Origin: Ruditapes philippinarum
Taxonomy: Eukaryota
Direction of reading: 5' to 3'
Assembly (NCBI RefSeq): GCF_026571515.1
Contig: NW_026857847.1
Location: forward strand, 1 to 64,000
DNA length: 64,000 nt
Shown: positions 16,066 through 58,500 of the stretch, piece after piece
Layout of the letters: each line of letters starts with the position of its first letter
How positions within the stretch are numbered: position 1 is the stretch's first letter
The notes under the pieces: generated by a model
What the model was told of the DNA's origin: nothing
Databases searched by the model: none
Seen by the model: only the letters and a program-made list of their open reading frames with translations
Program-made: the position numbers and the translations under genes

Positions 16066-16122
<57 letters not shown>

Positions 16123-17753: not shown

Positions 17754-17759
17754 TTTATT
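17754..17759 (-). promoter_or_regulatory. Candidate polyadenylation signal of gene B (AATAAA)
   Basis: tttatt on the plus strand, 30 nt downstream of the stop codon; such hexamers are common in AT-rich DNA. Confidence 0.35.
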
Positions 17760-17788
17760 AAGATGCAAGAGGCGTTTTTATCTCCATT

Positions 17789-20700
17789 TCAAGTCTGTAT
17801 CCTAACCTGGGTAAGTGTGACGTCACCATCAATGCGAAGGGTATCGACACGGTCGAGTTGCCGGATCCTGTGATTGAACTGCAGCATATGCTTGTCGTTC
17901 ACGGCCACCTATAAATAAAATGTACCAGAAAAGGTATATACTCACTAAATATCGGCCCCTTACTATTTCTCTCAGAATTTGCAAGTCTTTAAGAACAACG
18001 AAGGATCAAATGTGTTGAGTTTAGATATCTACAACTTTAAATTGTTATTATAATTAATGTATAATCACCAACATTCACATCAGCTTATTCCCAGTGTAAG
18101 ATACAGAGTAACGTCAGCAGAGAGGCCCTTTGCAGAACCATAACCTTTTAACAACAACCAATTTTCCCACATTGATATTTGACTCTGAATTTATCTTCTG
18201 TAGAGCAACATCTCTTAGATACAACCAAAACAGTAACCTCCCAAAGGATTTTGCTGTGCAGAGACTGTTCTGTACGAACTTATTCATGACGTAAAACTAG
18301 GTGTTTGACGGCAGACGTTATCCGATTAGGGGTGTCACGGTAAGTAAAAATGTTAAAATCAAACTACCAAAGGAACCTTCCTGAGAAGTTTGGATGAAAT
18401 TGGCTTAGCGGTTTATGAGGAGATGTCGTTTAAAGTAAAAGTTAACAGATGGACGCCGAACGAAAAGCGATCACAAAAGCTCTGTCACCATGTCACTTTG
18501 TGACAGGTGAGCTAAAAATACAAACACAATGAAATATCTTATCATAATTAAACAAAAGTAATAATTAAAACTTATCTAAAATGCTTCATCTGAACCTCGG
18601 TTTCCGGTTTTTTAAATTTTTTGACCGATTCATTACTCAAATCCGACAGAAGCCGTTTAAACGGATAAATGCGTGGCACTCCTATATCAGATTGTGCCGG
18701 CTATTGATATTCAATCAAATGTTGAATATTCCAAAACATTTCAATAAAACAACGTCTCCGATAAGTAAAGTTACATTGAAAACTTAAAATGTGCAATTCT
18801 TTAAGGACCACAAAGATCAAATGCGTTTAGTGAAAATATCTTCAACCTATTATTTAAAAAAGTATCAGTTTTAAATTAGATTCAAAAACATTCACATCAG
18901 CTTATTTCCAGTGTCAGATACGGAGTAACCTCTGCAGAGATGCCCTCTGTAGTACTATAGGCTCTTAACAACAAACATGATCAAATTTTCCTTTTGACAG
19001 CAGATGTAATTATATTGATATTCAATCAAATGTTCCTAAACATTTCAATAAAACAACATCTCCAATAAGCAGAGCAACATGTAAAACTTTTACCTTAAAA
19101 CAGCCTTGTTCAACCAAAATGATCATCTCGAAATGTTCACCAGTTTTAAACGGGAAATACCCAATCTGCCTCTCTTCCATACCCCACCCACCATCTTTAT
19201 GGTTTCGTACAATGCAATTCCTATCATAGCCGTAAGAAAATCGTACATCAAAACAAAATGTGATTAATGAAGGTTGAAACTTGTCGCCATTCTGCAGGTA
19301 AACTGTGAACCTAAACAGATATATATATATATATATATAATGTCTTAATGACATGAAACTGTTTGTGTCCTTGCACGTGCGTGTGCGCGCGAGAGATAAT
19401 ATGTATGTGTTTCTACGAAAGATTTACGTAACAACTCAAATGCTCACTTCCGGAAGTGGTAAAAACTATAATGCTGAGATACTTAACTAGTGTATTAGAA
19501 TATGTTGCTGGACTCTTTTTATGATATTTTACATTCTATGTATATTATTGTTTATGTGACTGATGCATCTAATAGGCCCAACATTTTCAAAAACTGTTCA
19601 ATAATAATTTTATGCTTATCTTATACTAAAGTTATCATGCATATTTTATATACGACTGAATATAATCTTTTCGATGTCAATTTCAATAGAAGTTACAAAA
19701 ATTATTAGTACAAACTCATACAAATTCGTTTCAGCTAGTTTCTTTGAATTATGTCGTTGAGGTCACAAGATTTGTCTAAGATATCTATTTTACGCTGACG
19801 TTGCGTTCTTAGAATGACGTCATTTTGCTGTTATAAATGAAGTTGTAAATTCATAATTATGCTACTGTAAGAAACACAGTGCGACATGAAAATATCAGTT
19901 TTCGTAATTTCTTTCCGAAATAAGATAATTACATGTCGTCACAAGCAAGAATATCAAGCTCTCGTGTTTACTGTATAGTGGAAATCCGGCAGAGCATCGT
20001 TACCGCCGTAAACAGTTACCCTCGAGCTAGATATTCATGTCTGTACCGACGCCCAATGTACCGGCCCCCGGTGTAAGATTAATATATTCTGTCGGAATGT
20101 ACCGATTATACCCGAGCTTCTGCGGTATTATCACTTTATGTAACACTGATAAAATGTATTTTGCATACCTTGTCGCCTTTGGTCGTGGTACTCCGCAGAT
20201 GAAGATTATATTATTTGGCTTGAGATGACCAGTTTTATGTATATATGGCATAACCTGTAAAGTGCAATATCATATCTATTTAAAATCGCAGACAAAATTG
20301 CAAAACCATCCGTAATACACCCACTACAAGCAATAAAATATGCAATAAAACTATTTCGACAAAAAAGAAAAACAGGCACATGCATCAACACTTTATTCAG
20401 ATAGTGATATTGTGAGGACAATAAAAAAGAAAAAACATACAATCAAAGTAAACAAAACTAAACAAAACGATGAGGTATAAAAACAGCAAAAAATAACAGT
20501 TCAGCAAACAAAAATGATAATATTAAAAAAAATAAAAATGATTTAAGTGATAAGAAAATAATGAGTAGCAACCAGATAATGCTAGGACCAAGGAAAGTCA
20601 GACTAATAGGCAGGTTGTTAGACGGGAAAGCAAGCACATATCACAAGGTAAAAATTATTTGTCCAGCAGTCAAGAACGAAACTTGTTCTGTAAATATTTT

Positions 20701-23700
20701 GTTTTAATTATTATTATAACTTATTACTTACATAGGCATGTGACCGACGTCCTCTTTTGTTACATGAACTTACACGATGATTGTTGCCTGCCGCCTGTTC
20801 ACCTGAGCATGCTTTTGGTTTCTAAGACAAAATGCCATACATATCCATAAAGTATATGTGTAAGTCAAAGATAAAGACTATAGGTTAAAAGTAATCAGAC
20901 TTGCAAGAAATAAAAACGTAAGATATATTATAATTGGAATTTATAACACATGCCAACTGTTTTAAACGGACCCATTTTGCAACTATTTTTTTTGAACTGT
21001 TAATTATCGCTTTTGGTAATATCATATAAATATGACAATTTGAAACGGGGTAGCCAACACTATAGAGTCTGACCAGGCTTCCACATGTACAAGCTGGTCT
21101 GGCTCTATACTAGTGGCCAAGGCTAATCACTTTCGGTTAGAACAGGGTACGAGGGTTGTTCAAATATGAATGCAACTAGGCCAATATCTCGCTTTTATCC
21201 ATGTTTTGCACGAACTATGTACATGTATCGCATAGATGGTTGTGTAAGTTCTCAATTGATACAAACTATGTGTTAATCAGTTCAGTCCATCTTTGACAAT
21301 AGCTTGATTAATGCTTTTTACTCGTGTATACTAAAACTAAAATGGTTGGCAAAAGGTCTCCTTACACTGACCAAATACGGTCCTGTATCAAGAACCGCTG
21401 TAATTTTGGTATACAGGCGGAGCAATGAAATTTCTCCTTCATCTGCCACACGGTGATGTAAGAATTTTAAAAGTGGTTTGGATTCAGTAAAAAATACACC
21501 AAATGCAAGCCGTCCGAAAACTGCAACTTCGCAAAGAAATGGTTGAAAAGGGAAAGGATTTATTACTATTGATACAAGTTTTACAACTAGGTATATAGCA
21601 AAATGCGTTGGTATCTCTGTAGGAGCCGCTCATACAATCCTCAGAAGTGATTTAAAAATGAGGAGGGTAAGTGCCAGATGAAAACCCCACCTCCCTACAA
21701 AAGAGCAAAAACTTGCTCGAGTAAGAATCTCCAAACAATTGTTGAAACAGTTCCTTAAATACAGCAATCAATCTTTCGAAAATATCATCACTGGCGATGA
21801 GCGTGAGTTCACTTAAATAAACCCAAGCGAAAGATATATAACAAAATATAGGCAACCAAAGGAAGTCAAAGACGTTCGCATGTATCGACGAGCAGTGAAC
21901 ATCAGAAACCCCATCGATTATGTGTATGTATAAAGATCTATTACGCTGCCCGATCGTTCAAACTTAACGGGGGTCTTCAAATATGAAGGCAACTGGGTCA
22001 ATTTTCAGAAGTGCTTAACAAACAACAAAATAGCCGAACCGAGATTTTTTCGCGTTTGATATTTTCTTCCAGCAAGGTGTTTTTTTGAGCGTCGGAAATA
22101 GGAAAAAGTCACAAGGGGCAAGATCTGGCGAATAAAGAGGGTGAGGAAGCTCGACAACCTTTTCCTGTTTAAAATATTCTCGTACAATAGCCGCTTTGTG
22201 TGAGGAAACATTGTCATGTAACAACCTGACACCACAGAGATCAGTTGCTGGTCGACGGCTTTTAAAATACTTCCTTTTATGAACGACATTGCCTTTGTAA
22301 AACTTGACATGTACAGATTTACCCTTTGATAAGGCAATTTGAATAGAAGGATCTTGATTGTTAAAGAAAATTACATACATAAACCTTTTGACACTCATGG
22401 TTCTTTTGCTACGCATCGTCTTATTATAAAAACATGCTTTATGTTCGTTAGGCATTTAATAATGTACTGAACTTATTTTAACAGTTCGAATAAAAATTGA
22501 AATAAAAGAGTTGAGAAAAAGCTGTTTAAGATAAAAATTATCGTAATGCACATTTTGAAATATTTTTAAAGAACCTAAATGATCACGCGATACAATGTAC
22601 TACATTTTAGCTGTAAACACGATAACTTTTTATTACACTTAAACATTTAAGCTGTTGTGTTTGTATTATCGTCAAACAGATCATTTTAAAGCATATTTTC
22701 CTTGATTATATCTCATGTTAAGTTATGGTGAAACAAAAGCAAAATAACAAGGAAAAAACTTCTTAGACCTATCTTCATAACAAATGAGACACCTGGCTAT
22801 GTTTAGTTTTTCTGATATACAGTAGCAAATTATTTTTGAATCATTTAAGCCAGTGCACACACTCGAAATAAGACAAGGTACGCCCCACTCAGGTTCTGCG
22901 TTGGGTTGCAATAATAGGTCACGGTCACATCATACATTTACACATTTAAAAAGGGTCTGAAATGTTCACTTAATTCATTATATTCATGCTCTCGATTGAC
23001 AATCATTGTAGAAATACGTACACGTGACTGTTGTGGCACATGAGGTGGTTGGCTACGACGTCCAAGTTCGTTCAACACCGCTCCAGCAAACTGGACGGCC
23101 GCACCAGATAGCATTTTCAATCCTGAATGATTATCTGCGTTCATATCCTAAACAAACAAGATTTGAACTTGATACATTTCCTTTCGTGAATCGTTTTATA
23201 ATTATCTAGAATGTTCCAAACAATACGATTATAGTATGTCATTGCGATAAAACAGTTATAGTATATGAAACTCGTTAGTTACGGGGATATAACACTGGCT
23301 GGGGCGACATCTCGGGATGTTTCTGCAAAAACGGCCTCGCCATATTTTAGCAGAAACACCCCTTGATGTCGCCCCAGCCAGTGTTATATCCCCGTAACTA
23401 ACTCTTTTCAAACTTAAAAACTCGATAACATTGTTTCGTTTATTTAAAGAAGGAAATAATATAATTATTATTTAGATTTAGTTTTTAATCTTCAAAACCT
23501 CTGTGCTCTACTTTCTATTTCACTATATTTTCATCGTTTTTTAGATGTATTTTGCTCAATTCACGTTAAAAACGAAAGTACATAAATTGGAATTGATTGA
23601 CTGTGTAAAGACAAGAAAATAAGCCGAAAAGCAAGTAAAATGAGTGAATGACGTATTTGGTATCTTGTCACAGTTTCCAAAAACAAAATATGAACAAGTA

Positions 23701-36999: not shown

Positions 37000-37514
37000 G
37001 CACAAACTTTTGTGAATCCTTTACTCCATGAAAGATAGAAAAAATACTGGTGTAGGCTACTTTCTGTAGCATCTTGTCAAATTCAAACGTATAATATATT
37101 TGGCAGTCACCGACCTAAGTACAAATGTTTACCCGAAGAGTTTTACTTCAACATGTATGTGATAGCTGTTTACACATTTTCGAAATCGTAGGTTCTGTTA
37201 AATGTTGAAAGATTATAAACATATTGCGATTTTTCCCCTAGAAAATACTGAATCAATTTGATGTAATTCTTGGAGTACTCAAACTATTATCAGTACTAAT
37301 TATATATGAAAGTATATCAAGACTCAAATTCGCAATGTTAAAGCTAAAATGAAAATAAAATGAAAAAAAGAAAATAACATAAAAGCACTCTTTTTAGAAT
37401 ATAAATTTTAAGGAAAAATAAGATTGAAAAAGTGTCACATAGTGTCACATTAATTCACCAAAAACGCTTATAAAAATTGCCAGCATCTGACACTGAATGC
37501 GGTACGAGTCACAT

Positions 37515-40500
37515 TTAGCCCTGGAATCGAACCTGGGTTAGCCTCAAGTCACCGTCAATGCGAAGAGTGTCGATCAGGTTCAGCTGACGTACTCGATGGT
37601 TAAACTCTAGTAGATGCTGATTATTCACCGCCACCTGAAAGCAGACATTGATATTTTTAAAGAAAAAACAAACAGACATCTTTTTTTTCAATATTGTGAT
37701 ACATAAAAATATTTTAGATTCTGTTTAATCATTATTTAAGCTCAGAATTCAGGAAAAGTTAAAAATAGCTTCTTTGAACCACATTCGAGTCCGCTTCCTG
37801 GAACTAAACCAGCACTTGAATCAACCGGGAAAACACGGCCGTGTTCCTAGTAGGGTTCGAAGCCAAAATCCATACTACCTTAATTAACAAAATTAACAAG
37901 AGCTGTCGGTATGACAGCACGCTCGACTATTCTAAGTCAATCTGATGTACCTTGTTACTATAAATAAGTATTGTAAGTTTCAATTGAATATCTCAAGCAA
38001 TAATTGAGATATTTGACTTTACAAAAAAACTTTAACCAAAATTTCTAAGTTGCAAAGGGGCATAATTCTGTCAATATTGTAGGCAGAGTTATCCAACTTG
38101 TCAATCTGATGTACCTTGTTACTATGAATAAGTATTGAAAGTTTCAATTGAATATCTCAAGTAATGATTGAGATATTTGACTTTACAAAAAACTTTAACC
38201 AAAATTTCTAAGTTAAAAAGGGGCATAATTCTGTCAATATTGTAGGCAGAGTTATCCAACTTGTCAATCTGATGTACCTTGTTACTATAAATAAGTATTG
38301 AAAGTTTCAATTGAATATCTCAAGTAATTATTGAGATATTTGACTTTACAAAAAACTTTAACCAACGCAGACGCCGACGCGGACGCTGACGCCGACGCCG
38401 ACGCCGGGGCGACAACAATAGCTCTCATATTCTTCGAATAGTCGAGCTAAAAATGAAATTAAAATAGATCAGAAAATATTCAAGTTGGTTACGGATTTTT
38501 AAATTGACTTGACCTTAAATAGATGGTAAAAATCTTGGTAGTTTCGGTTTCAAAAGCTTGTGTTATAATCATTTACTGAATTAAAATTAAGGACACTAAT
38601 TGCTTACAATCTACTTACATTACTTCTTACAAAATGGTGATGTTAAGTAAAGTAATAACAAAAGTTTTTCAACACAGTATTTTGAAAATTTCAAAAATAA
38701 TTGAAATAATAATGCACATAATTTTACATAGAAATTTCACCAATATAGAAAATACCCAGATTTGACCTAAAATTATTTAGTTATATCATTTCAAAGTAAC
38801 AATAGTCTTCTTTAAAAGAACAATTACAGAAAGGCTAAAGTTCATCATTTTGTAAAGCAATATGCGCAGCAAGAGCTTGTAACCAATAAAGTATAGTTTA
38901 ATATCAAATATTCATTTTGTCACACAGTTTACAGTATAAATTGTATAAATATAATGATTAACGCAAGAACTAAGAATTATACAGCTATATATTTAGATAT
39001 ATCAATGATAGTGTTATGCTAGTTTTATTCTACTTCTATTTGTTCTATTTAAGAAAAAGTAAAGGGAACTAAATATCTAAAAAAAAATGTGCATGCACAT
39101 ATTTAATTCATGCTATTAGAAAGGTTATTTTTAACATCAACAAAATAACATGATCTCAATTTTCATCGTCGTTTTAACAACTATGTTTACATTATATGCT
39201 CTACAAACTAAAATCTTGCATTAGTCCACGGTTCTCCCACGAAAACATCATTTCAAAATAAAAAAAAACAACTAATTCCATGCAAATACTTTAAGCTGTT
39301 AATATGCGTATTTATGCGTTCAATTGTCTTTTCATGCGTACTTATGCGTATTAAAAAGTTGTTAACTTATAAGGCTTTTAAAAATCAAAATTAAAAGAAA
39401 GAAAAAATATAACAAGAAGCAAGTAAGTTTGCATATGCAAGCTTATCAAGTTATATTTGTTACATTTTATGAACATGAATTTTCCCTTATAGATGTGATA
39501 GTAAAATTTCATACAAATGTTAAATGATCCGGTACCAAACGGTTCGAGATGAAGACCAAATGAAATTTGGGATAAGAGCACGGATATGTCGTGACATTAT
39601 TATTGATAGATCGTCTTTTTGCGTGACGTTGGTTTTAGCAGACAAAGCAAGACTCGGCATTGAATCAGGCAAAGCGTGACTAAGCCATGAAACGGAGAAA
39701 AATTAACTGCTTTGAATCAGACAAGGTGGTGTTTTGCTTTTAAAACAGACAAAGCGTAATTTTGCTTTGAAATATTCCCAACAAAGCGTGACTGACTTTG
39801 CTGTAAAACAAAGAGCGTGATTTTGCTTTGAAACAGAAAAAGCGTGACTTCTTTTAAAACAGACATAATTAATCAGCAGAAAGCAAAGGTGAACCCAAAA
39901 ATGTTAAAAAAAAACACACACACACACAGAATTGATCAAAAGAGTTGGGTATTTATATCCAAAGGGTGACGATTTGGAAAATCCAATATGTAATGCTGCA
40001 CATAAGATACATAAGCCATCGGACAAGAAGTCTTTATAGATTTTATTTTTTAAATTCATTTATAATTCTCCCGTGAACTACTTTATGCATCAAACCGGAA
40101 ATATTTATATATATCTTTCGGACACAAAAACCTAAGTGGTTTGTGTGGAGATGTTGCGAATACATGTTTTTGTTTCTTTCTTTCTGCCTTTTGTTTTATC
40201 TTTCGTGGGGGAATTGTTTGGTTATCTACCTTGTAGCAATGTGGCTCAATCAAAATGATCATCTCAAAGTTTCCATTTGGCATGAATGGGAAATGGGTCA
40301 CGTGCCTCTCTTCTTGACCCCAGTTCCCTTGTTTGTGATTCCTTACGACAACATTCCGGTCATTGCCGTAATTAAATCTAGCATCAAAGCACATTCCGAT
40401 ATGGTGAGGCTCGTGCTGACTTCCCTGCTGAAGGTACACTGTAAATCTGGAACAAAAATCTCGTGCATTCATTCCACGTTGTGTCGCTAATCATGCTATG

Positions 40501-43500
40501 AATTTGAAAACTTAAAATACAATCGATCAAAGGTTATGCAAGCACTAAACTACGCAATGTGAAGTAAAATGGATAGTTCCCGTTACAATCGCCTTTACGT
40601 CCAGTATATGCTCTGAGAAAATAAAAAATATCGTGTTCAAAAGAAGATATAAAATCAGGATCGGTCAAAAATCAGGATCAGAATTTTAAGATATCTTATT
40701 ATGGTTAATAAATTTCATCACAAATATCAATATAAATGGCAACTAAACATTTCACTACCGGACTGTCCACAATATCTTACTCTCATAAACATTGCATGAT
40801 ATATTTTTGAATATCAGAAAGTCAATGCTAGTCGTTAGACATCAAATATTGTTAACCAAGTTTCGGAAAAATGCCTCCGATTTTCCTAGGAAAACATATT
40901 AAAGCACTGCATAACTTTCACAATTCTGACTTTATAATTCTTAAAACACGAGGTCATTGAGACCCGTCTTTTAATAAAACAGAAAATGCAGAAGTTGACG
41001 ATTGGAATGCAGTAAACATCAAGCTGTGTCGATACCTATCTATTATCCGTCTCTCGATCAAGTGAGGCAATGAAATTCGGATGAACTCCAAGAGCAGAAC
41101 AGGATTTCAAAAGCGTTCTTTTATAAAAATTAACACGTATGTTCCTTTAAATGAATAAAATGGTTCTGGAAATCGCTTGATTTTTCAGTATTAATAAGTT
41201 TGACTATGCAATTTTTAAAACTATCGGCGACTGAAATTCCCGTTCTATTTCTCAAGATACCAACTAATGATGAAAAAAGCATAAATCATGTGTTGTATAC
41301 GCAACCATCACAAACCCGCAAAAAATCAGCATGTTCCAGAACTTTCCGTAAGCAATCCGTAAGCGACCAAGAGCTAAAGCGACCAAAATTAAAAATTTTT
41401 TATTCGCGATACATAATGGGTATGGACAGTTCTGATGTTAGCGGAATTCTTGCGAGCTATATATAAATAAAAAACATATGCATTGCAAACATGTGTTAGC
41501 AGGTAAACTCTGGTTATCTAAAACAAACAAGCAAGCACTGAGTGTCATTAAACATACGAACACGTGAACTCCGTGCAGATTTCATACTACCTTAAAACAG
41601 TATGGCTCGACAAGAACAATCGCTTCAAAATACATATTTGGTTGAAAGGGGAAATAACCGCAGGGCAGCGTTCTTTCTTCCGGACCCCAAGAATTCGTGA
41701 GTAGGCTGTTTCTGACGATTACATTTCTGTCATTTCCATAGTTAAAACGAACATCAAAGTGAAATGCAATGTCGCCATATCCGCATTGTAAGTTGATTGA
41801 GAACCTTTGACAAACATGCACATGCCAATATTAATTCGTTAAAATTCGGCATATTCCGTCACTTTCCGTGTACAATACATATTTAATAAACGGCTACATG
41901 ACTAGGAGCAACAGAAAAGAATCTTATCAACCAAACGCTTCTTACATAGAAATACAAATAGGAAAAGTGACGACAACGAACTGATTATAAATAAAGTACA
42001 GTGAAACCTCTACAAAGTAACACCCTTTCGGACACAAAGTTTTTGCAGGTGTAATTCTGCAGAGGGTAGATTTTTAGTAATTGATTACTTCGGGTAGAAT
42101 TGATACTGTTGCTATACAGAGGTTATCGGTCTATAGAAGGCTATTCTATACTGGTTATTCTGAATCTATATAAACTCGTATAAATCATACCGTGAAAAGA
42201 AACTTAAACTGAGAAAACCGTTAACTAAACATTATAATAAACAAGAGGGCCATGATGGCCCTGAAGTCGCTCACCTGTATATAGGCCCCCCCGGAGCATG
42301 GCCAGTTCAAACCCCAGGGCTTTTATTGGAACAAACTTGGTAGACACCCATTAGAAGATGTTTCATGCTAAACATCTAAGGTTTAGCTCGTTGGGTTTTT
42401 TAAAAGAAGATTGTTCAAGCTTTTCCTTTACACATATATTTAAAAACAATGACACCCCTGGGGCAGTTTTGACCCCAGGGCTTTTATTTGAACAATCTTT
42501 GTAGACACTTACTAGGAGATTTTTCATGCTTAATATCTAAACTCTAGCTATTCGGGTTTTTTCGAAGAAGATTTTTAAGTTTTTGCTATACACATATAAG
42601 GCAAATCAATGAGCCCCCCCCCCCCCGGGGCGGGGCCAATTTTGACCCCAGGGCTCTTATTTAAACAAACTTGGTAGACATCCATTAAAACGTGTTTCAT
42701 GCTAAATATCTTAGCTCTAGCTCTTTGGGTTCTTTAAAAGAAGATTTTTAAGTTTTTACTATATTCATATAGGGAAAATCAATGACCCCCTGGGGCGGGG
42801 CCAATTTTGACCCGAGGGCTCTTATTTGAACAAATTTTGGAGACATATATTAGAACATGCTTCATGCTAAATATCTTAGCTCTAGCTTTTTGGGTTCTTT
42901 AAAAGAAGATTTTTTAAGTTTTTACTATATACATATAGGGCAAATCAATGACCCCCTGGGGCGGGGCCAATTTTGACCCCAGGTCTTTTATTTGAATAAA
43001 CTTGGTAGACACTCACTAGAAGATGTTTCATGCCAAATATCTAAGCTCTAGCTCTTTTGGTTTTTTAGAAGAAGATATTTAAAGTTTTTTCTTTTGGTTG
43101 CCATGGCAACCAGTGTTCTGCATGGAATTAAATTCTTTGAACAATTTTCAAAGGTGACCACCAAAGGAACATTCCTGTGAAGTTTGGATGAAATTGGCCT
43201 AGTGGTTTATGAGGAGATGTCATTTAAAGTAAAAGTTTACGGACGACGGACGGACGGACGACAGGCGGACGCCGGACAAAAATCGATCACAAAAGCTCAC
43301 CCTGTCGTGACAGGTGAGCTAAAAATTGAACATCGCGACCGACGGTTTTCTATCTCACACATTGTATAATTGAACAATATTCCTTACACAGTTGGAATAA
43401 ACGTCATGTCTTCCAAATAAAATTCTGTTTTTGAGACTTCTGTGCAGTGCCTTTGTCATAAAATTATTTGCGAAAATCAGAAACCATATATTTGTACCCA

Positions 43501-46500
43501 GCCGTAGTTTGGTTTTTTACAGCCAAATATCTAAATGCCAATATTATAGTAAGATTTTGATTAAAAAATGAACTGTCAAGAACAAAAAATATCTTGTATT
43601 GGTTGTTCCTCGGCAACCTTAAAGTTTGTGCATGTTGATATGAAGTGTATTCGCGAATTTCCTATGTAAACTAGCTGTGTAAAACCTACACTAATAACAA
43701 ATGAACCGCGTCACGACAAAACCAACATATTGGGTTTGCAACCAGCATGGATTCAGACCAGCCTGCGCATCCGCGCAGTCTGATCAGGATCCATGCTGTT
43801 CGCTACCAGTTTCTCTACTTGTAATAGGGTTTGTAAGCGACAGCATAAATCCTTATCAGACTGCGCGGATGCGCAGGCTGGTCTGGATCCATGCTGGTCG
43901 CAAACGCATAACGTTGGTTTTGTCATGTTGGGGCTCAAATATATTCTATAAAGAAAGCTGCATCATGAATAATCCTATATGACCCGATGCAACGGCAGTA
44001 CCGCCACCATAATCTCCGTGTGCACCTGATGCATGGACTAAATTATTGTTCGCTTAAATCAAAACAGTTATCATATTCTCGTGAAAATTCGTCACTTTTC
44101 GTCAAGTTACGTAACATAATAAACTTTAATCCAAAGCTGAAAATAACGATGTTTACCGAATGTAGACGAAATACTGCTTAACGTTTATAATAATGAATAT
44201 CTAATCGTTATTGCCACTAAATGTTAGATTCATATTTGTAATAAGTAGTTCGTTAATGAAATTTCATTGAAAATCAAAATAAAGATATTTGAATAAAGTT
44301 ATTTTTCTTTATATTCAGGACAAAACAGATTCGATTAATTCGTTTTATGAAATTAAATTACATGATTTGTTATTTGATTTGTTATTAAAATATTTTGTAA
44401 TTAAAATGAAAATTGTGTCATGATTACTTTTTAAATAGATTTTTAGCTCATGATTTAAATGAAGTAACCACGTGATTTTTACCTGCTTGGATTTGGATGT
44501 GGCACTCCGCTGATGAAGATCATCTTGTTTGGATAGATGCCTCCCATACCCTGAACGAATGGTACCGGCTGCAAAATAAACAGAAAGGACATGTTAGAGA
44601 CGAAATTTCGAAAATTTTCAAAGAAACAACGAAATGGTATACAGTATTAAAGAAACAAAAACGGAATGACAAAATTCGAAAAAATGCAAAGAAACAACGT
44701 TACTGTATACACTTTTAAAAGGACAAATTTAATAAGAAGAATCTTATGCACTAACGTGTATATACGAGAGTATAGAACCAATGTGCCGCCAATAGAACAA
44801 CTATGAATCAAAATGATTTAACCTAAACTTTATGCAAATCAATATGATGATAATAACAGATGCAAAAACGAACTTCTTTCTTTGTAATGTCAAAAAAAGT
44901 AAATGCTGATTACTTACCGGGTTGAATATTGGGCCGCCCCCGGGGTATGGATAACTGGCCCCTCCAGATGGCGGGTAGCCACTACCTCCACCATGCTGAA
45001 ACAAAAATTAGGGATCTATCATATCAACAAATATGCGCGTTGCGTTGTCAAATGCCGCAACGACGCTAAATGTCACTTAATATGTCGCACTGTTAACGCT
45101 AAATATCGCAACCGCCGCTAATTGTCTCAAAGTGTTTTGCCGTTAAATGTGGCAATGATTACGTTAAATGTCGCATCACTTTCCCTTACCGTTAAATGTC
45201 GCAGCACCGGCGTTAAATGTCGCTTTTGTTTTTTGTTTGTTTCATTCTACGCCTTTTCCCAACAGTATTTCAGTCATATAGGCGGGCAGTTTCCTAACCA
45301 TAGTTCCTGGAGAGTAACACCAGTACTAGACTACCTTCCACCGCGCTAAACTACCAAAGCATCTCCCGGAGATCGAACCTCACTTCATTCGAATTTTTAT
45401 ATCACAGGTACCCTCTCATTTTTTAACACATAGGTACCGTCAAAGCACGACATATGCTTTTAGGTGCGTTAATCGCTAAGTATGTAATATTTACATAAAA
45501 GTAATAAATATTACATACATACTTAACGATAAACGCAAATAAAAGCATATGTCGTGCTTTGAGGGTACCTTTGTGTTCAAAAATGAGAGGGTACCTGTGA
45601 TATAAAAATTCAAATGAAGAGAAGTAGCCAGTGCAGCTGCAAAACCGAAAGTAGAGTGTTTTTATGAATTTTACATTTATTTTTGACAATATACTACCAT
45701 TTGTCCGAAGATGATATGAACATATTAAATATGTATGATGCATATATAATCACACAGGTTCATTTCAGCCCGAAAAATATGTCGTGGTGATGGGCGAGGC
45801 AAGACATGTCGGTTTGTGAAGTTGCAGTACATGAAAATCGGGCACATGACAAATCAGCACATAAATAAAACATCATAGTGTTCCGTGGTATACATCTTTT
45901 CTACGTGTCATACCTCTTTTCCTTATGACAGTGAAAATTTACTGGATTGTTATCCATTGCAGGTTTGTTTTTAGCAGAGAATGACCTGTGCATGTTCAAA
46001 GAGGGTACCGTTTGAGCAGATTTCGCAAGGAAAGTACCGCTATGGATATGCACCGTGTAATTTCATGTATACCAAATGGTATCAAGTCAATACTAGCGTC
46101 AAGTGGATGATCTGGTGAATGATCTGGTGACTAGCTATTTATAAAATAGGAAAGGTTTTGTTGTGATGTACAAAGTTATTGGTTGAAATTGAAGTCATCT
46201 GAGTTGGTATTATAAATTGACGACCATAATTTATATGCCAAAAGGCCTCTAACTGTAAGGCATCTTTGTATACGTTTTTCATAACAAATTAGATGTCGTG
46301 ATTTTTAACTACGACATCAGTTTGAGATTGATCTAACACACTACAGTTTCATAGACATAAAGGCAGATTGAAAACAGTATAATAGAATTTGCTTTACACC
46401 GCTGGAACCTAAAATGATTTTACCAGTATCAACATACATGTTGCCAGGCTTCATGTACATCTGTGCAGACTTAACCGGCCCTGTACTTATGGCTGACTAA

Positions 46501-49500: not shown

Positions 49501-52500
49501 TTTCCCTCACCCATCAACAATCAGACTGAAATAAACCAATATGGACAATCTTGATTAAGGTGCAAGATACTCCAGAATTAACCTGATCCCTTTGAAAATA
49601 TCACTATCACACAGTGCAAACAATGGCAATTTTAAAAATGCACAATTAAATGTCGGTCATATGTTTAGATTTTTCACAAAATTTTATTCGCGCCAATTGT
49701 CAACGATTTATTTTCAACTTTCTAACAACCATTCGGAGAGTCAAAAATACATACAAAGCTACCATATATTTAGTTTCGGGTAAATATCCAAAATATCTGA
49801 TCATTTCCTACACACACACAAGAAAAAGAATTGCAATGACAGAGAAATATCAAAACTTTTCAGTGTCTTTACAATACAATGTCTATGTAAATAAAATTTG
49901 AATATGATGGCCACGATTTAATAAATGAAACATACTATTTGATTATACAGGTTTTAAACGTAAATAAGCGGAAGGCATGTTAGTTAAAAAAGGAGTTTAA
50001 ATGTGGGTTGCTTTTTTCAATACTTCACATACGGGTGGTGGATGTTGATGGGGTGGATGATGTTTGTGATGTGGTCTTTCATGGCCGCCGCTAAATTCAT
50101 TAAAAAGTGCCCCGGCAAATTGACCCAGCGCAGCCCCAATACCACCACCATGACCGCCATGCCGCCCCTGAAACACCAGTTCCGAACATGTTCTTTTCAT
50201 AAAACATTCATCATAAAATCGTAAAATTTCGGTAAACTTCGTCACTTTACGTAAAGATAAAAAATATATAAAGCGTTCGTTATACTTCTTGAAGCAAACT
50301 AATCGTGTCATGAACAAATATCAGATACGGAAAATGACGATGTTTGCCGAACTTGCACGACATACTGATGAGTGTATCTTAGTTGCAAAAAATGATTTTT
50401 ACATTAATAACACATGAAGCAAATAAAACAACACTGAAAATCAAAGTGTAATCGACGATTTAAGTTTAAAACAAACGAATTGAAACAATTCAAAATTTAT
50501 AGTGTTGCACGTTCTGAAATAAACAAAGTTGTTAATGGAAAGAAAAATACTGTAGCAAATTATTCACAAATGACCTATTCCATAATTTTAAAATATCAAC
50601 GAATCATTAAATTATAACACGCATAGGCTTGCAGTTAAAAATAAGTTTGGAACTGGATGGATTTCAAATTGCATTCAATCAAGCTTTCTTATTTTCATTT
50701 TTCTTTGCAAACTTTACTTTTCAAAAACGAGTAGAAATGTATTAAACAGATTCGTTATCACGATTTCTTCAGCATAATTTTGTTATACTTGATGCATGAA
50801 GAAAAAAAAACACACTTTCATAAGGACTATGTCAAATTAAAGTATGTATATAGTAGTGTCATGCAGTGTAACAAGCAACAAACACTTGGGTGTTACATGT
50901 GTTAGAACCTCTCCCGGTTCCTTGGGATTCAGACCTTATCCCCCGGTTTGAACCGCCCCACTACACGGTCTGAAATCTTTACTTTTTTAGACTTGATGGT
51001 ACATGGGATTCTTTACTCTTGAAGTAATGGTTTAAAACAATTTTTAATTTTAAGGCAGATGCTTCATTTGTTTGAAAACGTTAAAAAAAATGACCGTTTA
51101 CAGGGGCAGTTAAAGCCGGGGGATACTTCTGACCTCCATATGTCTGTGTGAAAATAAATTAGTCATAAGCACACATAAAGTTACTAACAAAAACAGTTAA
51201 AATCATGATAACATTGACAAAGCCCCATTTTCAAGCCGACCGTTTGGCCAATATTATAATAAAACTGTAACCAGAAAATATTAACTGTTGAATAATACTT
51301 TACACGGCATTTATTCCTTTTTCCATTTTTGCCGCTATAATTTTTCTGAAACTAAGGTAAACAAAATATAAACAGAATATATAAATAAGACCCAAATGAA
51401 AAATGATATTTACGTGGTTTTCAAACTTTCTGAAAGTTTAGAATGAAAGTGTTAGACATTCGGTCTGACATGTCATGTAATTTTGTTGACAAAAAAATAA
51501 ACGTTAACCAGAAAAAATAACTGTTGAACGATACTTTACAAAGCATGTACATGTTTCATGTTTCCTTTTTCTAATTTTGGCATTATAACTTTTCTGAAAG
51601 TTAGTAAAACAAAAACACTAATCTTACACGAGTGAACATAATCAGACTTAAATACAAATGGTATACTGAAATTTTCGTGGTTTGTCATAAGACGATTTAA
51701 TAAAAGAACACGTATGTAAAAAGGCTTATTCTTTCATGTAGTTTCATGAATGACTGTATTATTTCAAATTACCTAGATGATAGTGCTGCTGTTTAATAAT
51801 TATTTCATTTTTGTTGTCTGGTGACTTTGATCAAGCAAGTGTTCAATTTATTAAGTTAACACAGAATATATCTTGGAAAAAGGATATTAAACGAGTGTGG
51901 GTTCAATACTACATTTATTAAACAAGTTGAATAAAATCAAATTATGCGAAATTCTCGCGAGCATTACACTTGTACTAGTATTGTTAAATTCAACGAATTC
52001 AATAAATTTAGTATTGCATTACTCAAATATAATAATTATCACATACCCAAAGTAAGAACTTTTTACAGTGGAAAAGAATCACTTTTTCATTTACGCGCAC
52101 ATAGTGTAACGCAAACGCTTAGACCGTCTTTGCACAGTGTTTTGACAACTCAAAAGCAAAAGCGACACGGGTGTGTGATATGATATATAAGCTTTTACCT
52201 GTACACTTAAAAGTTTTCACTAAGTTAAACCCGGAAACCAAATAAATAATTCTATATTAATTCAAGAATTAGAAAAAGAAGACAGAAAGAAAGAAAGAAA
52301 GATCAAGATGATCATGATAATATCAAATGCTGACCTCTTTTATATTTACTTGAAAAAGAAATTTATTACACTTACTTCAAAACGAATGTTGTTCACTCGG
52401 ATGCCTTGCTCCACAGTGATGTGGGTCACACGATGTTTCTGCAGCCTGTGATTGAAGTCACAGAAATGTGCTCCGTTCACCGACACCTGAAATAATAGAA

Positions 52501-55500
52501 TATTGCATCATGTCTAAAAACCAAAATATGGTTCGAAATTTATTGAGTACAAAATGCGCTGAAGCATAGGCCGATCTGTGCAAGGTGCAAACTTAGTAAA
52601 AACTATAAAGCTTCATGTGTACGTCCAATGAAATATTGACAAAATTACCAAACTGGAATTCATGCGTCATGATTCACTGCATTAAGATAGAAAGGTGGCT
52701 GACCCAAGGAAATCAAACGAGGATTTTCCTCTTCCGCGTAACACCCCAGTTTAGAGAAATTAGTCTTAAAACTTTTGCCAAATCTGAGCTAAACCTATGT
52801 TAAAAATACAGTGTTTCTTTGGGGTCATCGTATCTTCGCAAAGGCGACCGTAAACAAACGTAGAAGGCCGAGGCAACGAAACGATATTTTATGTTTACAT
52901 TTGATCCTGCAAAGTGAGTTACTTGACGTTTTATTACAAAGTAGACGATTTCTCGACGAAAATTCAAAATTTTATTACTTACGGAATAGTGGTGAGGTTT
53001 AACGTGGATCACGACGTCACAATGGTGTCCTTTACGGAATGGAAACCCTCCGTGCCTTTCCTCCGCTCCCCAAGAATTGTTTTGACAGCTGTTTCTTACA
53101 ACCTGAAATACAGTTTAATAGTATAATATAGTATAATATTAAAAATAATGAACAATAATTATATGCATAAAAAACACATTAACACGTATGCCTCATAAAA
53201 AAACTTTCAGACAATTTGAAAAAAATGATTGTGAAGAGGACGTCAACATATGAAACTTTTTTATTCAAGGTATTTTTGCGATATGAAGCTTTTTTAATAC
53301 ACGTAGAAAAATAATCGGCAAAAAGTGAATTACAAACAGAGTACGGCAGTCTTTTATTTCAAGCATTATTTGCATTCACAATGTAAATTGTGAAATATTT
53401 GTAACTTTTAGTTATTAAAATTGACAATCTTTTGAAATATATAGTTAATTCAATGCAACGCTGGAAATGAAAAGAGTATCAGTTGAAAATAAAGTTGAAG
53501 AAAATAGATGTTTTACTTAAAATGATGTTACTTCTTACACTTATTTATTCATTGAAATGTCACTACGCAAATACACTGATATGATGCTGGCCCCAGACAC
53601 CGCCCGGGACTACTCTTTTAAACCTGAACCCTAAATTTTAAAGATAAACTATGCTCATCCTTAAGTAAAATATCTTAATCGCAGAAATTTATTGAAATCT
53701 ATGAAATTCTTACAGAATATGTCTAATTTGAATTTGAGAATGAATAAACTATTTATTAAAAACTGCGTTCCCTATTACAGGTCCAGTAAAGTTGGTCTTT
53801 TCTTTAAAACAAGAGGGCCATGATGGCCCTGAGGTCGCTCACCTGTATATAGGCCCCCCCACCCCCAGGACAATTTTTACCCAAGGGCTTTTATTTGTTT
53901 ATTTGAACAGACTTGGTAGACACCCATAAGAAGATGTTTCATGCTAAACATCTAAGTTCTAGCTCATTGGGTTTTTTAAAAGAAGATTTTTAAAGTTTTT
54001 ACTATACACATATAGTTAAAAACAATGACAGCCCTGGGGCAGGGCCAGTTTTGACCCCCGGGCTTTTATTTGAACAAACTTTGTAGATATTTACTTAAAG
54101 ATGTTTCATGCTTAATATCTAAACTCTAGCTATTTGGGTTTTTTCAAAGAAGATTTTTAAGTTTCTGCTATACACATATAGGGGAAATCAATGACCCCCC
54201 CCCCCCGGGCGGGGCCAGTTTTGACCCCAGGGCTTTTATTTGAACATACTTGATAGACACCCATTAGAACATGTTTCATGCTAAATATCTTAGCTCTAGC
54301 TCTTTGAGTTCTTTAAAAGAAGATTTTTTAAGTTTTTACTATATGCATATAGGGAAAATCAATGACCCCCTGGGGCGGGGCCAATTTTGACCCCAGGGCT
54401 TTTATTTGAACAAACTTGGTAGACACTCATTAGAAGATGTTTCATGCTAAATATTTTAGCTCTAGCTCTTTGGGTTCTTTAAAAGAAGATTTTTTAAGTT
54501 TTTACTATATGCATATAGGGAAAATCAATGACCCCCCGGGGTGGGGCCAAATTTGACCACAGGGCTTTAATTTGAACAAACTTAGTAGACACTCACTAGA
54601 AGATGTTTTATGCTTAATATCTTAGCTCTAGCTCTTTGGGTTCTTTAAAAGAAGATTTTTTAAGTTTTTACTATATGCATATAGGGAAAATAAATGACCC
54701 CCTGGGGCGGGGCCAATTTTGACCCCAGGGCTTTTATTTGAACAGACTTGGTAGACATTCACTAGAAGATGTTTCATGCTAAATATCTAAGCTCTAGCTC
54801 TTTGGGTTCTTTAAAAGAAGATTTTTTAAGTTTTTGCTATATGCATATAGGGAAAATCAATGTCCCCCCGGGACGGGGCCAATTTTGACCCAAGGGCTTT
54901 TATTTGAACAAACTTAGTAGACACTCACTAGAAGATGTTTCATGCCAAATATCTTAGCTCTAGCTCTTTTGGGTTCTTTAAAAGAAGAATTTTTAAGTTT
55001 TTACTATATGCATATATGGAAAATCAATGACCCCCTGGGGCGGGGCCAATTTTGACCCCAGGGCTTTTATTTGAACAAACTTGGTAGACACTCACTAGAA
55101 GATGTTTCATGCCAAATATCTTAGCTCTAGCTCTTAGGGTTGTTTAAAAGAAGATATTTAAAGATTTTTCTTTCTGTTGCCATGGCAACCAGAGTTCTGC
55201 ATGGAATTAAATTCTTTGAACAATTTTTAAAGGTGACCACCAAAGGAACATTCCTGTGAAGTTTGGATGAAATTGGCTCTGGTTTATGAGGAGATGTCAT
55301 TTAAAGCAAAAGTTTACGGACGGACGACGGACGGACGGACGGACGCCGGACGAAAAGCGATCACAAAAGCTCATCCTGTCACTTTGTGACAGGTGAGCTA
55401 AAAAAATGCTCGTTTTTTTAATGACACTATATATTCATATTGTGACCACCTATAGCTACGTAACTTCTACTTTGTGTTGAGTCAAAACATGTTTATTTTA

Positions 55501-58500
55501 CATTTATAAAGAGCCTGTGTAGTAATTATCAATATTTACTACTATCACGTTTGAGCATAGTTTATTTTTAATAATATTGTTTGGCCGGCTTTGAATCGAA
55601 CTTTGAACTATTAACTACAAGGCGGACGCTCTTCAACAAAACCACAATTGCTATACGTTTTGCATAGGCTAGTTTCAATACTCTCAAAGAAATTTTTAAA
55701 AAAAAACACGAAATATACGTGCATGAATTGTTAGGGGAGGTAACTCGAGTACTGAAATGACAGTAACTCAGAACTTGCAACTATAATTATTATTGTCAAG
55801 GGAGGCAAATTAGGTATTCGAAAAAATAAACCGTAAGGGGAGGCAACTCGCGTTTTTTGCACTTAAAATTCAATAAAAACTCACTTGATTATCAGTAAAT
55901 CTTGGATTAAAGACAAAGGCACAATCACTTCTTGGATCAATGCTTCCTCCAGCTTGAAGAGATATTAAGAATCTGAAATATAATATACATGTATATAGAA
56001 TTTGACTGAAATATAATTTATATTTTTATAGAATCTAACATGATCTTTCGTTTGATGTAATTTTTCATAAAACGAATTTAAGAAAACTTGTTTCCTTGAC
56101 GAATTTCACAAAAGTTTATATCAAATTACGGCGGATGTCAGATACTATTTAATGCATGACTAAATTTAACAATAACAATTTGTTTACAACTTTATTTACA
56201 TAAACAAACAGTTAATGTTTATAACAAAAGTGGCCGTTATATTTTACGTGTATACATGTCCAGGAAGAAATTCGTAATGGTTTTGTTGCATAGAAAACGA
56301 TAGAAGGAAGTCATGTGACAAAGTATACAATTTTAACATAAATTCACGAACCAAACATTTTACATATCCATATATTATCAGTTGTTAAGAGAGTTTATGA
56401 TTCAAATCAACTTGAGTTTAACAGATTTGTACAATATCTTGCATAGTAAACTTGAGTCACGCGTTGAACAAGTACAATAGGTCTCGCGCATGACTTTAAA
56501 GCGTATATAACTAGTTCCGATAAATAGAAGTACTAATTTACCCATTATGGTGCTGTTCCGGTGTGCCGGACACGTGGATCTGCAAGCCATCGTGCAAACC
56601 TCCAGGGATCGGACCAACGTATGGAATACCCTGAAACAGCGAAAAATAAAATGAAGGACAGTTCTATAAACATTGTTTCCTCTTTTTCTCTGCGTTTTTA
56701 CTATTTTATCATACCTGTAATTTTTAATTACATATTTAATTATTTAATGACTTTGGTCAGACCAATGTATTTTATACATTTAACTATGAATAACTGGTCA
56801 TGAACTATGAATAACTGGTCCGCTCGGAATTTTTAAAGATGAGATGTTACAAAAATAATTGATTCGTGCAGAAAACTCTTTACTGTTTAAAAACCGGACT
56901 TTCATATTTATCATTGAAAGATCTGTGATCTATTTGTCTAAAAACAAGAACAAAATATTTAATGACTTATTGTTTCCTCTTTATAAAACCCGGGTTAAAG
57001 CGTTTTGTAATAAACACTTATTAGAGTCATTCCTTTTCCTTCATTACATTTTTGTTGATTAATAGTTTTTATTGATCATATATCATTTCATTTACATGTA
57101 CATGTATATAGAAAAATCACAATAGTGAACGTTTAAAGGGACTCGTAGCTGTTGGTGATATGGTGGGACTGAAAGTATTTCTTTAAAATTTGTATACCAT
57201 TTGACTAAAGTTTAAAGTATTAACATGTGTGCTGAATTTCCGGTCATTTACTCACTCCAATTCTCCCGAATAAGCATTGTTATTGTGCAAAATGGCCTAA
57301 AATGAAAACTCGAATCGGGCTGACAATCCCACAAAATATTCGTGGGGGGGGGGGGGGGTCAGTATATTTTATTACTTTATCACCTTTTACTCTTTTTTTT
57401 TCATTTCAAGTGCCTCGGTTTATCTTGATAAGATTTTCAAATGTTATGTTATATGCTTTTAGTACCTCAGTGGAGCCCCTTTAATGTAAAAAAACCACGG
57501 AAGCATCAAATTATTTATATTTTTCACGCAGATGTATTCTCATTTATAAATTATCGACAGAACTGTTACAATTATCAACATAAAATCAATAACTTATAGT
57601 TAAATTCAGTTTCTTACTTTTTTCCACTTTTTTTGTATCAAAATAACAGAAATTCATTACTTTTGACAAAGATCTTTTTGTTGAATCATTGCCAATGCTC
57701 ATTTATTAAGGGTGTTAATAGCTAGAGTTTTAAAAAAAAATCCTTTTAAAATATTCTGATACCGTTTAATCAATCAACAAGATTCAACCTGTATTAAAAT
57801 TTTGATAACGATAATTCAACACAAGTACGCATACACTGAAGATAAACGGTGATAATCAATTGTAGTGAGTCGACACAAAACGTACTTAGCCCCTTTATTA
57901 AATATATTCTACGTCAAAAAGTTGTAAAAATATTCGTTTCCAAACAGTAATAAAATAATGCATCACTCGGTTGCACCCGGAAAGTGGCAATAAGAGAAAT
58001 TTCCATGAATCATCACCGACCCGAGAATCAATGCTTCGCAAAATTTCCCGCACTGTGGTAAAGCGTTGTTGACTGAAGTGCGGAACATAAAATATCGGCT
58101 AGTATTTCTACTTTTAACCCCTCTACAAACTATCATCAAATTAAAAATATATATATTTACAAACGGAAGAATGAATTTCACATTCGATAGTCTACTTGTT
58201 CGTTTTCGAATTAATGTAGTCTTTTTATAAATATAAATCTATATCTAAAACAACATGTATATTTATGGTATTCGTTTAAAAAAAATAACCTGTTAAAAAC
58301 TTCAATTATATCTAGATCACCAAGTTTATGTCACCAGGTCTCTAGGTAACAAATGATAATTTGTTTCGGCCTTCATCGTTTACTCACCCCTCTAGCTAGG
58401 TGAGTTAAGGTTAACTTTATATAAGTACATGTACATGTATATAACCGACATTATCAAACAAGGTCTCCGAATATTCAGTTCATTGTTAAAGCAATGATAA

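What the first reader, a model, noticed from the sequence alone, without database searches (positions are those of the whole stretch)
40230..41804. Mutually exclusive exons that would swap the entire carbohydrate-binding site of galectin CRD2
Seen: two paralogous, stop-free exons (214 and 217 nt, both 3n+1, entering in phase 2 and leaving in phase 0) lie between a single upstream CRD2 exon (44483-44568) and a single terminal exon (37515-37634). I found no extra N- or C-terminal CRD exons in the 1.1 kb between them, so this is not a third CRD. Including both shifts the frame to a TGA 20 codons into exon B, 154 nt before the last junction, which would be an NMD substrate. In the shared RFNYGNDRNV stretch all 10 residues are identical while 6 of 10 codons differ silently, suggesting an old duplication with both copies under selection. 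Established: this central exon holds all canonical galectin ligand residues (H-x-N-x-R, N, W, E, R). Inference: one gene makes two bivalent lectins with a constant CRD1 and a switchable CRD2, a small Dscam-like way of diversifying a glycan pattern-recognition receptor. Alternative splicing I know of in tandem galectins mostly changes linker length; I do not recall a binding-site MXE being described, but could not search.
Basis: partly seen in the sequence, partly recalled or inferred. Interest (0 to 1): 0.92.

Follow-up and report, generated by a model that had tools for sequence, protein, structure and literature searches.

The report
Galectin binding-site exon swap, clam
The Manila clam's known immune lectin gene (the MCGal tandem-repeat galectin) has two alternative copies of the exon that builds the sugar-binding face of its second domain; both copies are expressed, the pair is also found in two other clam species, and it sits in RefSeq gene models but in no paper I could find.

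Summary
Exon A (41804-41591) and exon B (40446-40230), on the minus strand, are homologous, open and in the same phase. Both match positions 29-96 of the galectin domain PF00337. They lie between one N-terminal CRD2 exon and one terminal exon.

Exact protein matches place the window in Ruditapes philippinarum. RefSeq isoforms X2 and X6 use exon A; X1, X3, X4 and X5 use exon B; none uses both. The published MCGal cDNA is the B form.

Two RNA-seq runs cover both exons at similar depth, and the intron between them has depth near zero. Including both exons gives a TGA 154 nt before the last junction. Skipping both also breaks the frame.

Mercenaria and Mya have the same A/B isoform pairs, and a tree separates an A clade from a B clade (99/94). 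Synonymous sites between A and B are saturated, so the duplication is old.

Exon A keeps the canonical His (HFDVRF). Exon B has Cys there (CFDARF), and that Cys is conserved across clams.

Limits:
- I never saw junction reads directly, because repeats swamped the junction table.
- Different glycan specificity is inferred, not shown.
- This is a two-way switch, not Dscam-like diversity.
- I found no paper describing it.

The parts
44483..44568 (-). Constant N-terminal exon of CRD2 (PVPFVQGMGGIYPNKMIFISGVPHPNPS + AG of an Arg codon). Its donor serves either exon A or exon B.
   Evidence: Sequence. Exact tblastn match to RefSeq isoforms X1 and X2, residues 231-259.
41591..41804 (-). Alternative exon A, 214 nt, 71 codons plus 1 base. 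Galectin strands S3-S6 with HFDVRF...VRN...WGPEER (canonical His kept). The acceptor is ...gtcaaag|G, a weak AAG acceptor.
   Evidence: PF00337 positions 29-96, E 2e-17. Exact in RefSeq X2 and X6. RNA depth about 120 per base in X24.
40447..41590 (-). Intron between the two alternative exons, 1144 nt. It holds no galectin-like coding piece and has no RNA coverage.
   Evidence: Depth about 0 in X23 and X24.
40230..40446 (-). Alternative exon B, 217 nt, 72 codons plus 1 base. It covers the same strands but has CFDARF (His replaced by Cys), a longer His-rich S3-S4 loop (SQHEPHHIGM) and a shorter loop after EER. The acceptor ...tttttgttccag|A is strong.
   Evidence: PF00337 positions 29-96, E 6e-11. 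Exact in RefSeq X1, X3, X4 and X5, and 69 of 72 residues match the MCGal cDNA. RNA depth about 90 per base in X24.
40384..40386 (-). TGA reached if exon B follows exon A in one transcript (codon 21 of B in the shifted frame), 154 nt before the last exon junction.
   Evidence: (frame 1 of exon B).
37515..37634 (-). Constant terminal coding exon of CRD2 (VAVNNQHLLEFNHR...RLTQVRFQG, then TAA). The 3' UTR continues below 37515.
   Evidence: (PF00337 positions 97-132). RNA depth 290 in the 37450-37649 bin of X24.
44918..44995 (-). Constant linker exon (HGGGSGYPPSGGASYPYPGGGPIFNP). Bounds come from tblastn and are approximate.
50033..50170 (-). Linker cassette exon rich in His, Gly and Pro. It is present in isoforms X1-X3 and absent from X4-X6, and it combines with either A or B.
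52376..56630 (-). CRD1 coding exons, constant. tblastn pieces lie at 56630-56541, 55971-55882, about 53102-52992, and 52492-52376. CRD1 has VFNPRF, so it too lacks the canonical His.

Best explanation
This is the Manila clam tandem-repeat galectin gene whose B-form cDNA was published as MCGal. Its second carbohydrate-recognition domain is built from one N-terminal exon, one of two tandemly duplicated central exons (A or B), and one terminal exon.

The central exon encodes strands S3-S6, the whole sugar-contacting face, so the choice gives two lectins with the same CRD1, linker and CRD2 frame but a different CRD2 binding face. Exon A keeps the canonical His (HFDVRF). Exon B has Cys there (CFDARF), a longer His-rich S3-S4 loop and a shorter loop after the EER motif.

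Exclusivity is most likely enforced by reading frame. Both exons are 3n+1, so including both gives a premature TGA 154 nt upstream of the last junction, which would be a substrate for nonsense-mediated decay. Skipping both shifts the frame to a TGA three codons into the last exon.

Shown: the anatomy, expression of both exons, annotated A-only and B-only isoforms in three clam species, the old age of the pair, and purifying selection on both copies.

Inferred: that NMD removes double-inclusion products, that the choice is regulated, and that the two forms bind different glycans.
For: - Anatomy and frames.
- Both exons are galectin positions 29-96.
- No hidden exons between them.
- RefSeq R. 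philippinarum isoforms XP_060597373 to XP_060597378 are exact A-only or B-only products of this locus.
- The cDNA ACA09732.1 (MCGal) is a B form.
- RNA-seq: in X24, exon A has about 124 and exon B about 93 reads per base. In X23 they have about 18 and 15. The A-B intron is about 0, and the terminal exon is deeper than either (bin depth 290 in X24 and 79 in X23).
- A second contig of the same genome, C9468, carries the same A-B tandem. There exon B differs by one synonymous base while the surrounding DNA is only about 91% identical.
- Mercenaria X1/X4 (B) against X2/X3 (A), and Mya X1-X3 (B) against X4 (A), differ in exactly this exon. A Mya GenBank model strings an A-like exon and then a B-like exon in that order.
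- The tree separates an A clade from a B clade with support 99/94, and Ruditapes, Mercenaria and Mya are in both.
- A against B: pS 0.86 (saturated) and dN 0.37.
- Both forms give confident galectin folds, mean pLDDT 90.4 and 89.8. Galectin-9 in the PDB matches at E 9e-60.
Against: - No junction-spanning read was seen. The single read-laying run returned only the 15 best-supported joints, all inside expressed repeats at 42050-43449.
- The RefSeq isoforms are computed models. I know only from general knowledge of NCBI's pipeline that alternative isoforms need transcript support.
- No transcript contig of this species was found for either form.
- A+B depth is below terminal-exon depth (about 0.69 of it in X24 and 0.38 in X23). 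This fits mutual exclusion better than joint inclusion but is not quantitative.
- No docking/selector RNA pairing stood out.
- Nothing here measures sugar binding.
Confidence: 0.88

Rival explanations
1. One of the two exons is a decaying pseudo-exon left by a tandem duplication and is not used in productive mRNA.
For: Exon A has a poor AAG acceptor. Exon B lacks the canonical His. No junction read was seen directly.
Against: - Both exons are covered at similar depth in two RNA-seq runs, with an empty intron between them.
- Both are open and conserved in a 91%-identical second copy.
- Both types are kept in Ruditapes, Mercenaria and Mya with saturated synonymous sites and dN 0.37.
- The cloned MCGal cDNA uses B, and RefSeq models use each.
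Confidence: 0.03
2. Missed small exons between A and B make a three-CRD protein, or A and B belong to two overlapping transcription units.
For: Multi-CRD galectins exist in bivalves (review PMC5877582). More CRD2-like units lie downstream in the window at about 20 kb and 10 kb.
Against: - tblastn with the N-exon and C-exon peptides finds nothing between 40447 and 41590, and the three frames there are full of stops.
- RNA depth in the intron is about 0.
- No annotated isoform has three CRDs.
- The downstream units belong to a separate gene model, P0165.
Confidence: 0.02
3. Transcripts that include both exons are a substantial product, so the pair works mainly as a switch for unproductive splicing and NMD that tunes galectin level, rather than as a source of two proteins.
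For: Joint inclusion gives a TGA 154 nt before the last junction. I could not read the 41591>40446 junction count.
Against: - Each exon's depth is well below that of the terminal exon (about 0.2-0.4 of it), where equal depth would be expected under joint inclusion.
- Both exons are under protein-level purifying selection across species, which a pure poison-exon role would not need.
- A-only and B-only coding isoforms are annotated in three species.
Confidence: 0.07

Closest known systems
MCGal, the tandem-repeat galectin of Ruditapes philippinarum (GenBank ACA09732.1, UniProt B1AAP1)
   Same: It is the same gene. The cDNA matches the window's exons with exon B in CRD2. The review PMC5877582 reports that it binds galactose and GalNAc, binds Perkinsus olseni and agglutinates Vibrio tapetis.
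   Different: Only the B form was cloned. The A form, which carries the canonical His, and the exon pair itself are not mentioned in any paper I could search.
FGFR2 IIIb/IIIc mutually exclusive exons (from general knowledge, not tested here)
   Same: Two tandem homologous exons encode part of one binding domain, exactly one is used, and the swap changes the ligand-contacting part while the rest of the protein stays constant.
   Different: That is an Ig domain of a vertebrate receptor kinase with proven tissue-specific regulators and proven ligand switching. Here the domain is a lectin, and both regulation and specificity change are untested.
Dscam1 exon clusters of arthropods (from general knowledge)
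   Same: Tandem duplicated exons, spliced in a mutually exclusive way, in a molecule linked to immune recognition.
   Different: Dscam has dozens of variants per cluster and docking/selector RNA pairing. Here there are two variants, and no such pairing was evident.
Linker-length isoforms of vertebrate galectin-8 and galectin-9 (from general knowledge)
   Same: Alternative splicing of a tandem-repeat galectin. This gene also has linker cassettes: isoforms X1 to X6 differ in two of them.
   Different: Those isoforms leave both binding sites untouched. Here the binding face itself is exchanged.
Oyster alternative oxidase CvAOXA/CvAOXB, from alternative splicing of a duplicated exon (PMC5589949)
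   Same: A bivalve gene in which a duplicated exon is alternatively spliced to give two protein forms (title and abstract seen).
   Different: A different protein family, with no role in ligand recognition.

Membership tests
Galectin, tandem-repeat type (Pfam PF00337 twice, joined by a linker) | Two galectin CRDs in one chain joined by a linker | tested here: met
   The RefSeq isoforms that map exactly to the window align over their full length with tandem-repeat galectins. PDB galectin-9 matches at E 9e-60 over residues 5-305. The AF2 models show two beta-sandwich domains and a disordered linker at 146-162.
Galectin, tandem-repeat type (Pfam PF00337 twice, joined by a linker) | Canonical sugar-binding residues H-x-N-x-R ... 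N ... W-x-E-x-R in the CRD | tested here: not met
   Exon A has H-F-D-V-R, N, W, E, R (Asn replaced by Asp). Exon B has C-F-D-A-R, N, W, E, R (His replaced by Cys, Asn by Asp). CRD1 has V-F-N-P-R. So the motif is only partly kept. The fold and family are not in doubt.
Galectin, tandem-repeat type (Pfam PF00337 twice, joined by a linker) | Beta-galactoside binding | not testable with these tools
   The review PMC5877582 reports Gal/GalNAc affinity for MCGal, which is the B form. Nothing is known for the A form.
Mutually exclusive exon pair from tandem exon duplication | Adjacent homologous exons of near-equal length with the same phase and compatible splice sites | tested here: met
   The exons are 214 and 217 nt, both 3n+1 and both AG...GT. 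They share 39 of 68 aligned residues and are 1144 nt apart.
Mutually exclusive exon pair from tandem exon duplication | Mature transcripts carry exactly one of the two | tested here: inconclusive
   Supported indirectly by A-only and B-only RefSeq isoforms with none carrying both, by a B-only cDNA, and by each exon being covered at about 0.2-0.4 of terminal-exon depth with an empty intron.
Mutually exclusive exon pair from tandem exon duplication | Including both or neither destroys the reading frame | tested here: met
   Including both gives TGA at codon 21 of exon B, 154 nt before the last junction. Including neither gives AG+GTGGCGGTGA, which reads AGG TGG CGG TGA.
Mutually exclusive exon pair from tandem exon duplication | The pair is conserved in other species | tested here: met
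   Mercenaria mercenaria and Mya arenaria have isoforms that differ only in this exon. The A and B clades are separated with support 99/94.
Dscam-type hypervariable exon cluster | Many alternative exons per cluster | tested here: not met
   Only two central exons lie between the constant exons.
Dscam-type hypervariable exon cluster | Docking-site and selector-sequence RNA pairing | tested here: inconclusive
   The inverted-repeat scan of 40100-44600 gave only short AT-rich pairs of 71-93% complementarity. No introns from other species were available to test conservation.

The most novel reading that the evidence does not exclude
The exon choice is a regulated, anciently conserved switch between two binding chemistries in one immune lectin. 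It dates from before the Venerida-Myida split and possibly before Unionida diverged. The A form has a His-containing CRD2 and the B form a His-less, Cys-containing CRD2 with a His-rich loop. On this reading the two forms recognise different glycans (for example parasite or bacterial against self), and the clam shifts the ratio by tissue or on infection. That would be the first lectin known to retarget its sugar-binding site by mutually exclusive splicing.
Probability: 0.4. Interest if true: 0.75.

Novelty: new member of a known kind. Interest (0 to 1): 0.55.

Why it matters
MCGal is a studied immune lectin of a major aquaculture species. It is reported to bind the parasite Perkinsus olseni and Vibrio tapetis (PMC5877582).

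All functional work I could find used the B form. The A form is a second protein from the same gene that differs only in the sugar-contacting face of CRD2 and alone keeps the canonical His. In the two RNA runs read here it is expressed at about the same level as B.

Expression studies whose primers or probes sit in constant exons therefore sum two different lectins. Recombinant work has tested only one of them.

More generally, alternative splicing of galectins is known for linkers. A conserved exon swap of the binding face is a simple, testable way of changing lectin specificity after transcription, and three clam species are available for comparison.

Tried and rejected
- **Read laying.** The junction, loose-end and variant tables were filled by highly expressed repeats at 42050-43449 and 37850-38450, so no exon junction was displayed. 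Only depth and a few exon variants were usable.
- **Runs X21 and X22.** Exon depth is 0-5, no higher than some intron bins (39250-39649), so I draw no conclusion from their apparent excess of B over A.
- **The look-up of encoding contigs.** It was closed, so I could not fetch the Mya, Mercenaria or Dreissena loci to compare exon order, intron length or intron conservation.
- **Search for transcript-contig fragments with the exon A open frame.** It found only relatives at 73% identity or less and none from this species. The full-length search likewise found no transcript contig of this species.
- **Inverted-repeat scan for docking/selector pairing.** Nothing convincing turned up.
- **Steric or U12-type exclusion.** Rejected, because the intron is 1144 nt and all the sites are GT-AG.
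- **Assembly artefact putting two alleles in tandem.** Rejected. Two contigs of this genome, the RefSeq models and a Mya gene model all have A followed by B.
- **Eight literature searches.** None found a description of this exon pair.
- **Joined exons.** All full-length proteins used are database entries returned by the tools, and exon searches were done by reference, exon by exon.
Full report
**Observation**

The gene runs on the minus strand. Reading 41950-40100 shows two AG/GT-bounded exons: A at 41804-41591 (214 nt) and B at 40446-40230 (217 nt).

Translated from their second base, both are open. A reads FSINLQCGYGDIAFHFDVRFNYGNDRNVIVRNSLLTNSWGPEER... and B reads FTVYLQQGSQHEPHHIGMCFDARFNYGNDRNVVVRNHKQGNWGQEER....

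- The upstream exon 44568-44483 ends with AG, so either exon completes an Arg codon.
- The terminal exon 37634-37515 starts in phase 0 and ends in TAA.
- Each exon alone matches Pfam PF00337 positions 29-96 of 132: A at E 2e-17, B at E 6e-11.
- The two exons hit each other at E 1e-19 in a tblastn of the window.
- If B follows A, the frame gives TGA at codon 21 of B, 154 nt before the exon's end.
- If both are skipped, AG joins GTGGCGGTGA and the frame stops after three codons.
- The 1144-nt intron between them holds no piece resembling the N-terminal or C-terminal CRD exons.

The exception is that neither exon has the full H-x-N-x-R motif: A has H-x-D-x-R and B has C-x-D-x-R.

**Identity of the gene**

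A profile-free search with exon B and two word-index searches returned RefSeq proteins of Ruditapes philippinarum that are exact products of this locus. All of their exons map at 95-100% identity to the window.

- The gene has isoforms X1 to X6, XP_060597373 to XP_060597378.
- Aligned, X1, X3, X4 and X5 contain exon B, and X2 and X6 contain exon A.
- Apart from that exon they differ only in two linker cassettes. Both A and B occur with long and short linkers, and no isoform has both central exons.
- The cDNA ACA09732.1 (B1AAP1, 'tandem repeat galectin', known in the literature as MCGal) is a B form.

The full-length sequences used are database entries.

**Expression**

No indexed RNA run held the stretch, but four raw RNA-seq runs of the same species were offered. 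I laid them on 37450-43449. In X23 and X24 the picture is clean.

| Feature | X24 | X23 |
|---|---|---|
| Exon A, reads per base | about 124 | about 18 |
| Exon B, reads per base | about 93 | about 15 |
| A-B intron | about 0 | about 0 |
| Terminal-exon bin depth | 290 | 79 |

- Both exons are therefore expressed at similar levels. Each is well below the terminal exon, which fits one-or-the-other use better than joint inclusion.
- The reads over exon A carry the letters of the second genomic copy at 41732, 41738 and 41764, and half the X24 reads over exon B carry its letter at 40290. They are real transcripts of this gene's alleles.
- The junction table was swamped by expressed repeats at 42050-43449, so I never saw a junction read. 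This is the main gap.
- X21 and X22 are too thin to use.

**Second copy in the same genome**

Contig C9468 carries the same A-then-B tandem about 1.1 kb apart. The region is about 91% identical in DNA.

- Exon B differs by a single synonymous base.
- Exon A differs by 9 bases, 6 of them non-synonymous, giving 4 residue changes.
- The splice sites are the same in both copies.
- RefSeq annotates A and B isoforms there too, XP_060552848 and XP_060552846.

I cannot tell whether this is a divergent haplotype or a recent duplicate.

**Age and distribution**

- Mercenaria mercenaria isoforms X1 and X4 against X2 and X3 differ in exactly this exon. So do Mya arenaria isoforms X1-X3 against X4.
- A GenBank model of the Mya gene (P0005) strings an A-like exon and then a B-like exon, giving the same order as here.
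- A maximum-likelihood tree of the central-exon segment, 46 rows and 73 columns, splits an A clade from a B clade with support 99/94. Ruditapes, Mercenaria and Mya are on both sides.
- Unionid CRD2s fall inside the B clade. Pteriomorph, gastropod and Lingula CRD2s fall outside A+B (92/88). With so few columns the finer branching is unreliable.
- Between A and B, 39 of 68 aligned residues are identical, synonymous sites are saturated (pS 0.86) and dN is 0.37.
- The duplication therefore predates the split of venerid and myid clams, and both copies have been kept under purifying selection.

**What differs between the two exons**

- Aligned to human galectin-9, the swapped exon covers the His-Asn-Arg strand, the Asn strand and the Trp-Glu-Arg strand, which together form the sugar-contacting face.
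- The A clade keeps His (HFDVRF, HLDVRF). The B clade has Cys or Val there (MCFDARF or MCVDARF in clams, VVDARF in unionids).
- B also has a 4-5 residue longer loop with a conserved HEP motif, and a shorter loop after EER.
- Both clades have Asp where vertebrate galectins have Asn. CRD1 of this protein has Val in place of the His.
- Both forms give confident models, mean pLDDT 90.4 and 89.8, and the CRD2 blocks are mostly above 90.
- The B form (MCGal) is reported to bind Gal/GalNAc, Perkinsus olseni and Vibrio tapetis (PMC5877582).
- That A and B differ in specificity is a reasonable inference from the position of the differences. It has not been shown.

**Mechanism of exclusivity**

- The intron is long and all sites are GT-AG, so steric hindrance and U2/U12 incompatibility do not apply.
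- No convincing long-range RNA pairing was found.
- The frame rule, with decay of double-inclusion transcripts, is the simplest explanation. It is inferred.
- Exon A has a weak AAG acceptor and exon B a strong pyrimidine-rich one. This suggests B as the default and A as needing activation, which is speculation.

**Novelty**

Eight full-text searches found no description of this exon pair or of mutually exclusive exons in any galectin. The library lacks most subscription journals, so absence there is weak evidence.

The isoforms are already present in RefSeq for three species. The mechanism is a well-known kind: FGFR2 IIIb/IIIc is a close analogue, and an oyster example in another gene is PMC5589949. 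I class this as a new member of a known kind, of moderate interest. It is a concrete, testable case in a studied immune lectin, but it is not Dscam-like diversity.

**Tools**

Noticed in passing
window 9642-23147, minus strand: A separate downstream gene (RefSeq 'galectin-8-like isoform X2', P0165, 498 aa) is built from two CRD2-like units. Its central exons at 19309-19094 and 10472-10245 both fall inside the B clade and lack the canonical His (CFDVRF, VFDVRF). It looks like a gene born from B-type CRD2 duplicates.
   Followed up: partly
window 50033-50170, and an unmapped 16-codon cassette between 52376 and 50170: Two linker cassettes are alternatively included in RefSeq isoforms X1-X6 and combine freely with exon A or B: GRHGGHGGGIGAALGQF...PPHQHPPP, and FQKNYSGKNGKRNKCR. 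The gene therefore has at least six annotated protein forms.
   Followed up: partly
window 42050-43449 and 37850-38450: These intronic repeats have very high RNA-seq depth in all four runs (up to about 18,000). Most reads are only 90-95% alike, and many joints skip or go back by about 160-170 or 330-340 nt. This points to a tandemly structured repeat family transcribed from many genomic copies. It swamped the junction tables.
   Followed up: no
G000 contig C9468:154837-159391 (loci L002, L013) against window 38730-43303: A second copy of the whole region is about 91% identical in DNA. Exon B is nearly unchanged (1 synonymous base), while exon A has 4 amino-acid changes close to the binding motif (F14L, Y22F, N24S, L34Q). 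Reads in X23 and X24 carry only the C9468-type letters in exon A. Whether this is a haplotig or a paralogue is unresolved, as is whether exon A is under diversifying selection.
   Followed up: partly
proteins P0154, P0302, P0192, P0262, P0264 (Dreissena polymorpha): In the zebra mussel the orthologous gene's annotated isoforms are all B type, and A-type CRD2s sit in separate genes on another chromosome-scale contig. The exon pair may have been resolved into separate genes there. I could not check this because the locus could not be fetched.
   Followed up: no
G000 contigs C840:84930-85145 and C713:53109-53324: These are further B-type central exons, 75% and 67% identical to exon B, in the same genome. 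The search detected no A-type exon beside them. C840's locus ends close to the hit, so an upstream exon could lie off the contig.
   Followed up: no
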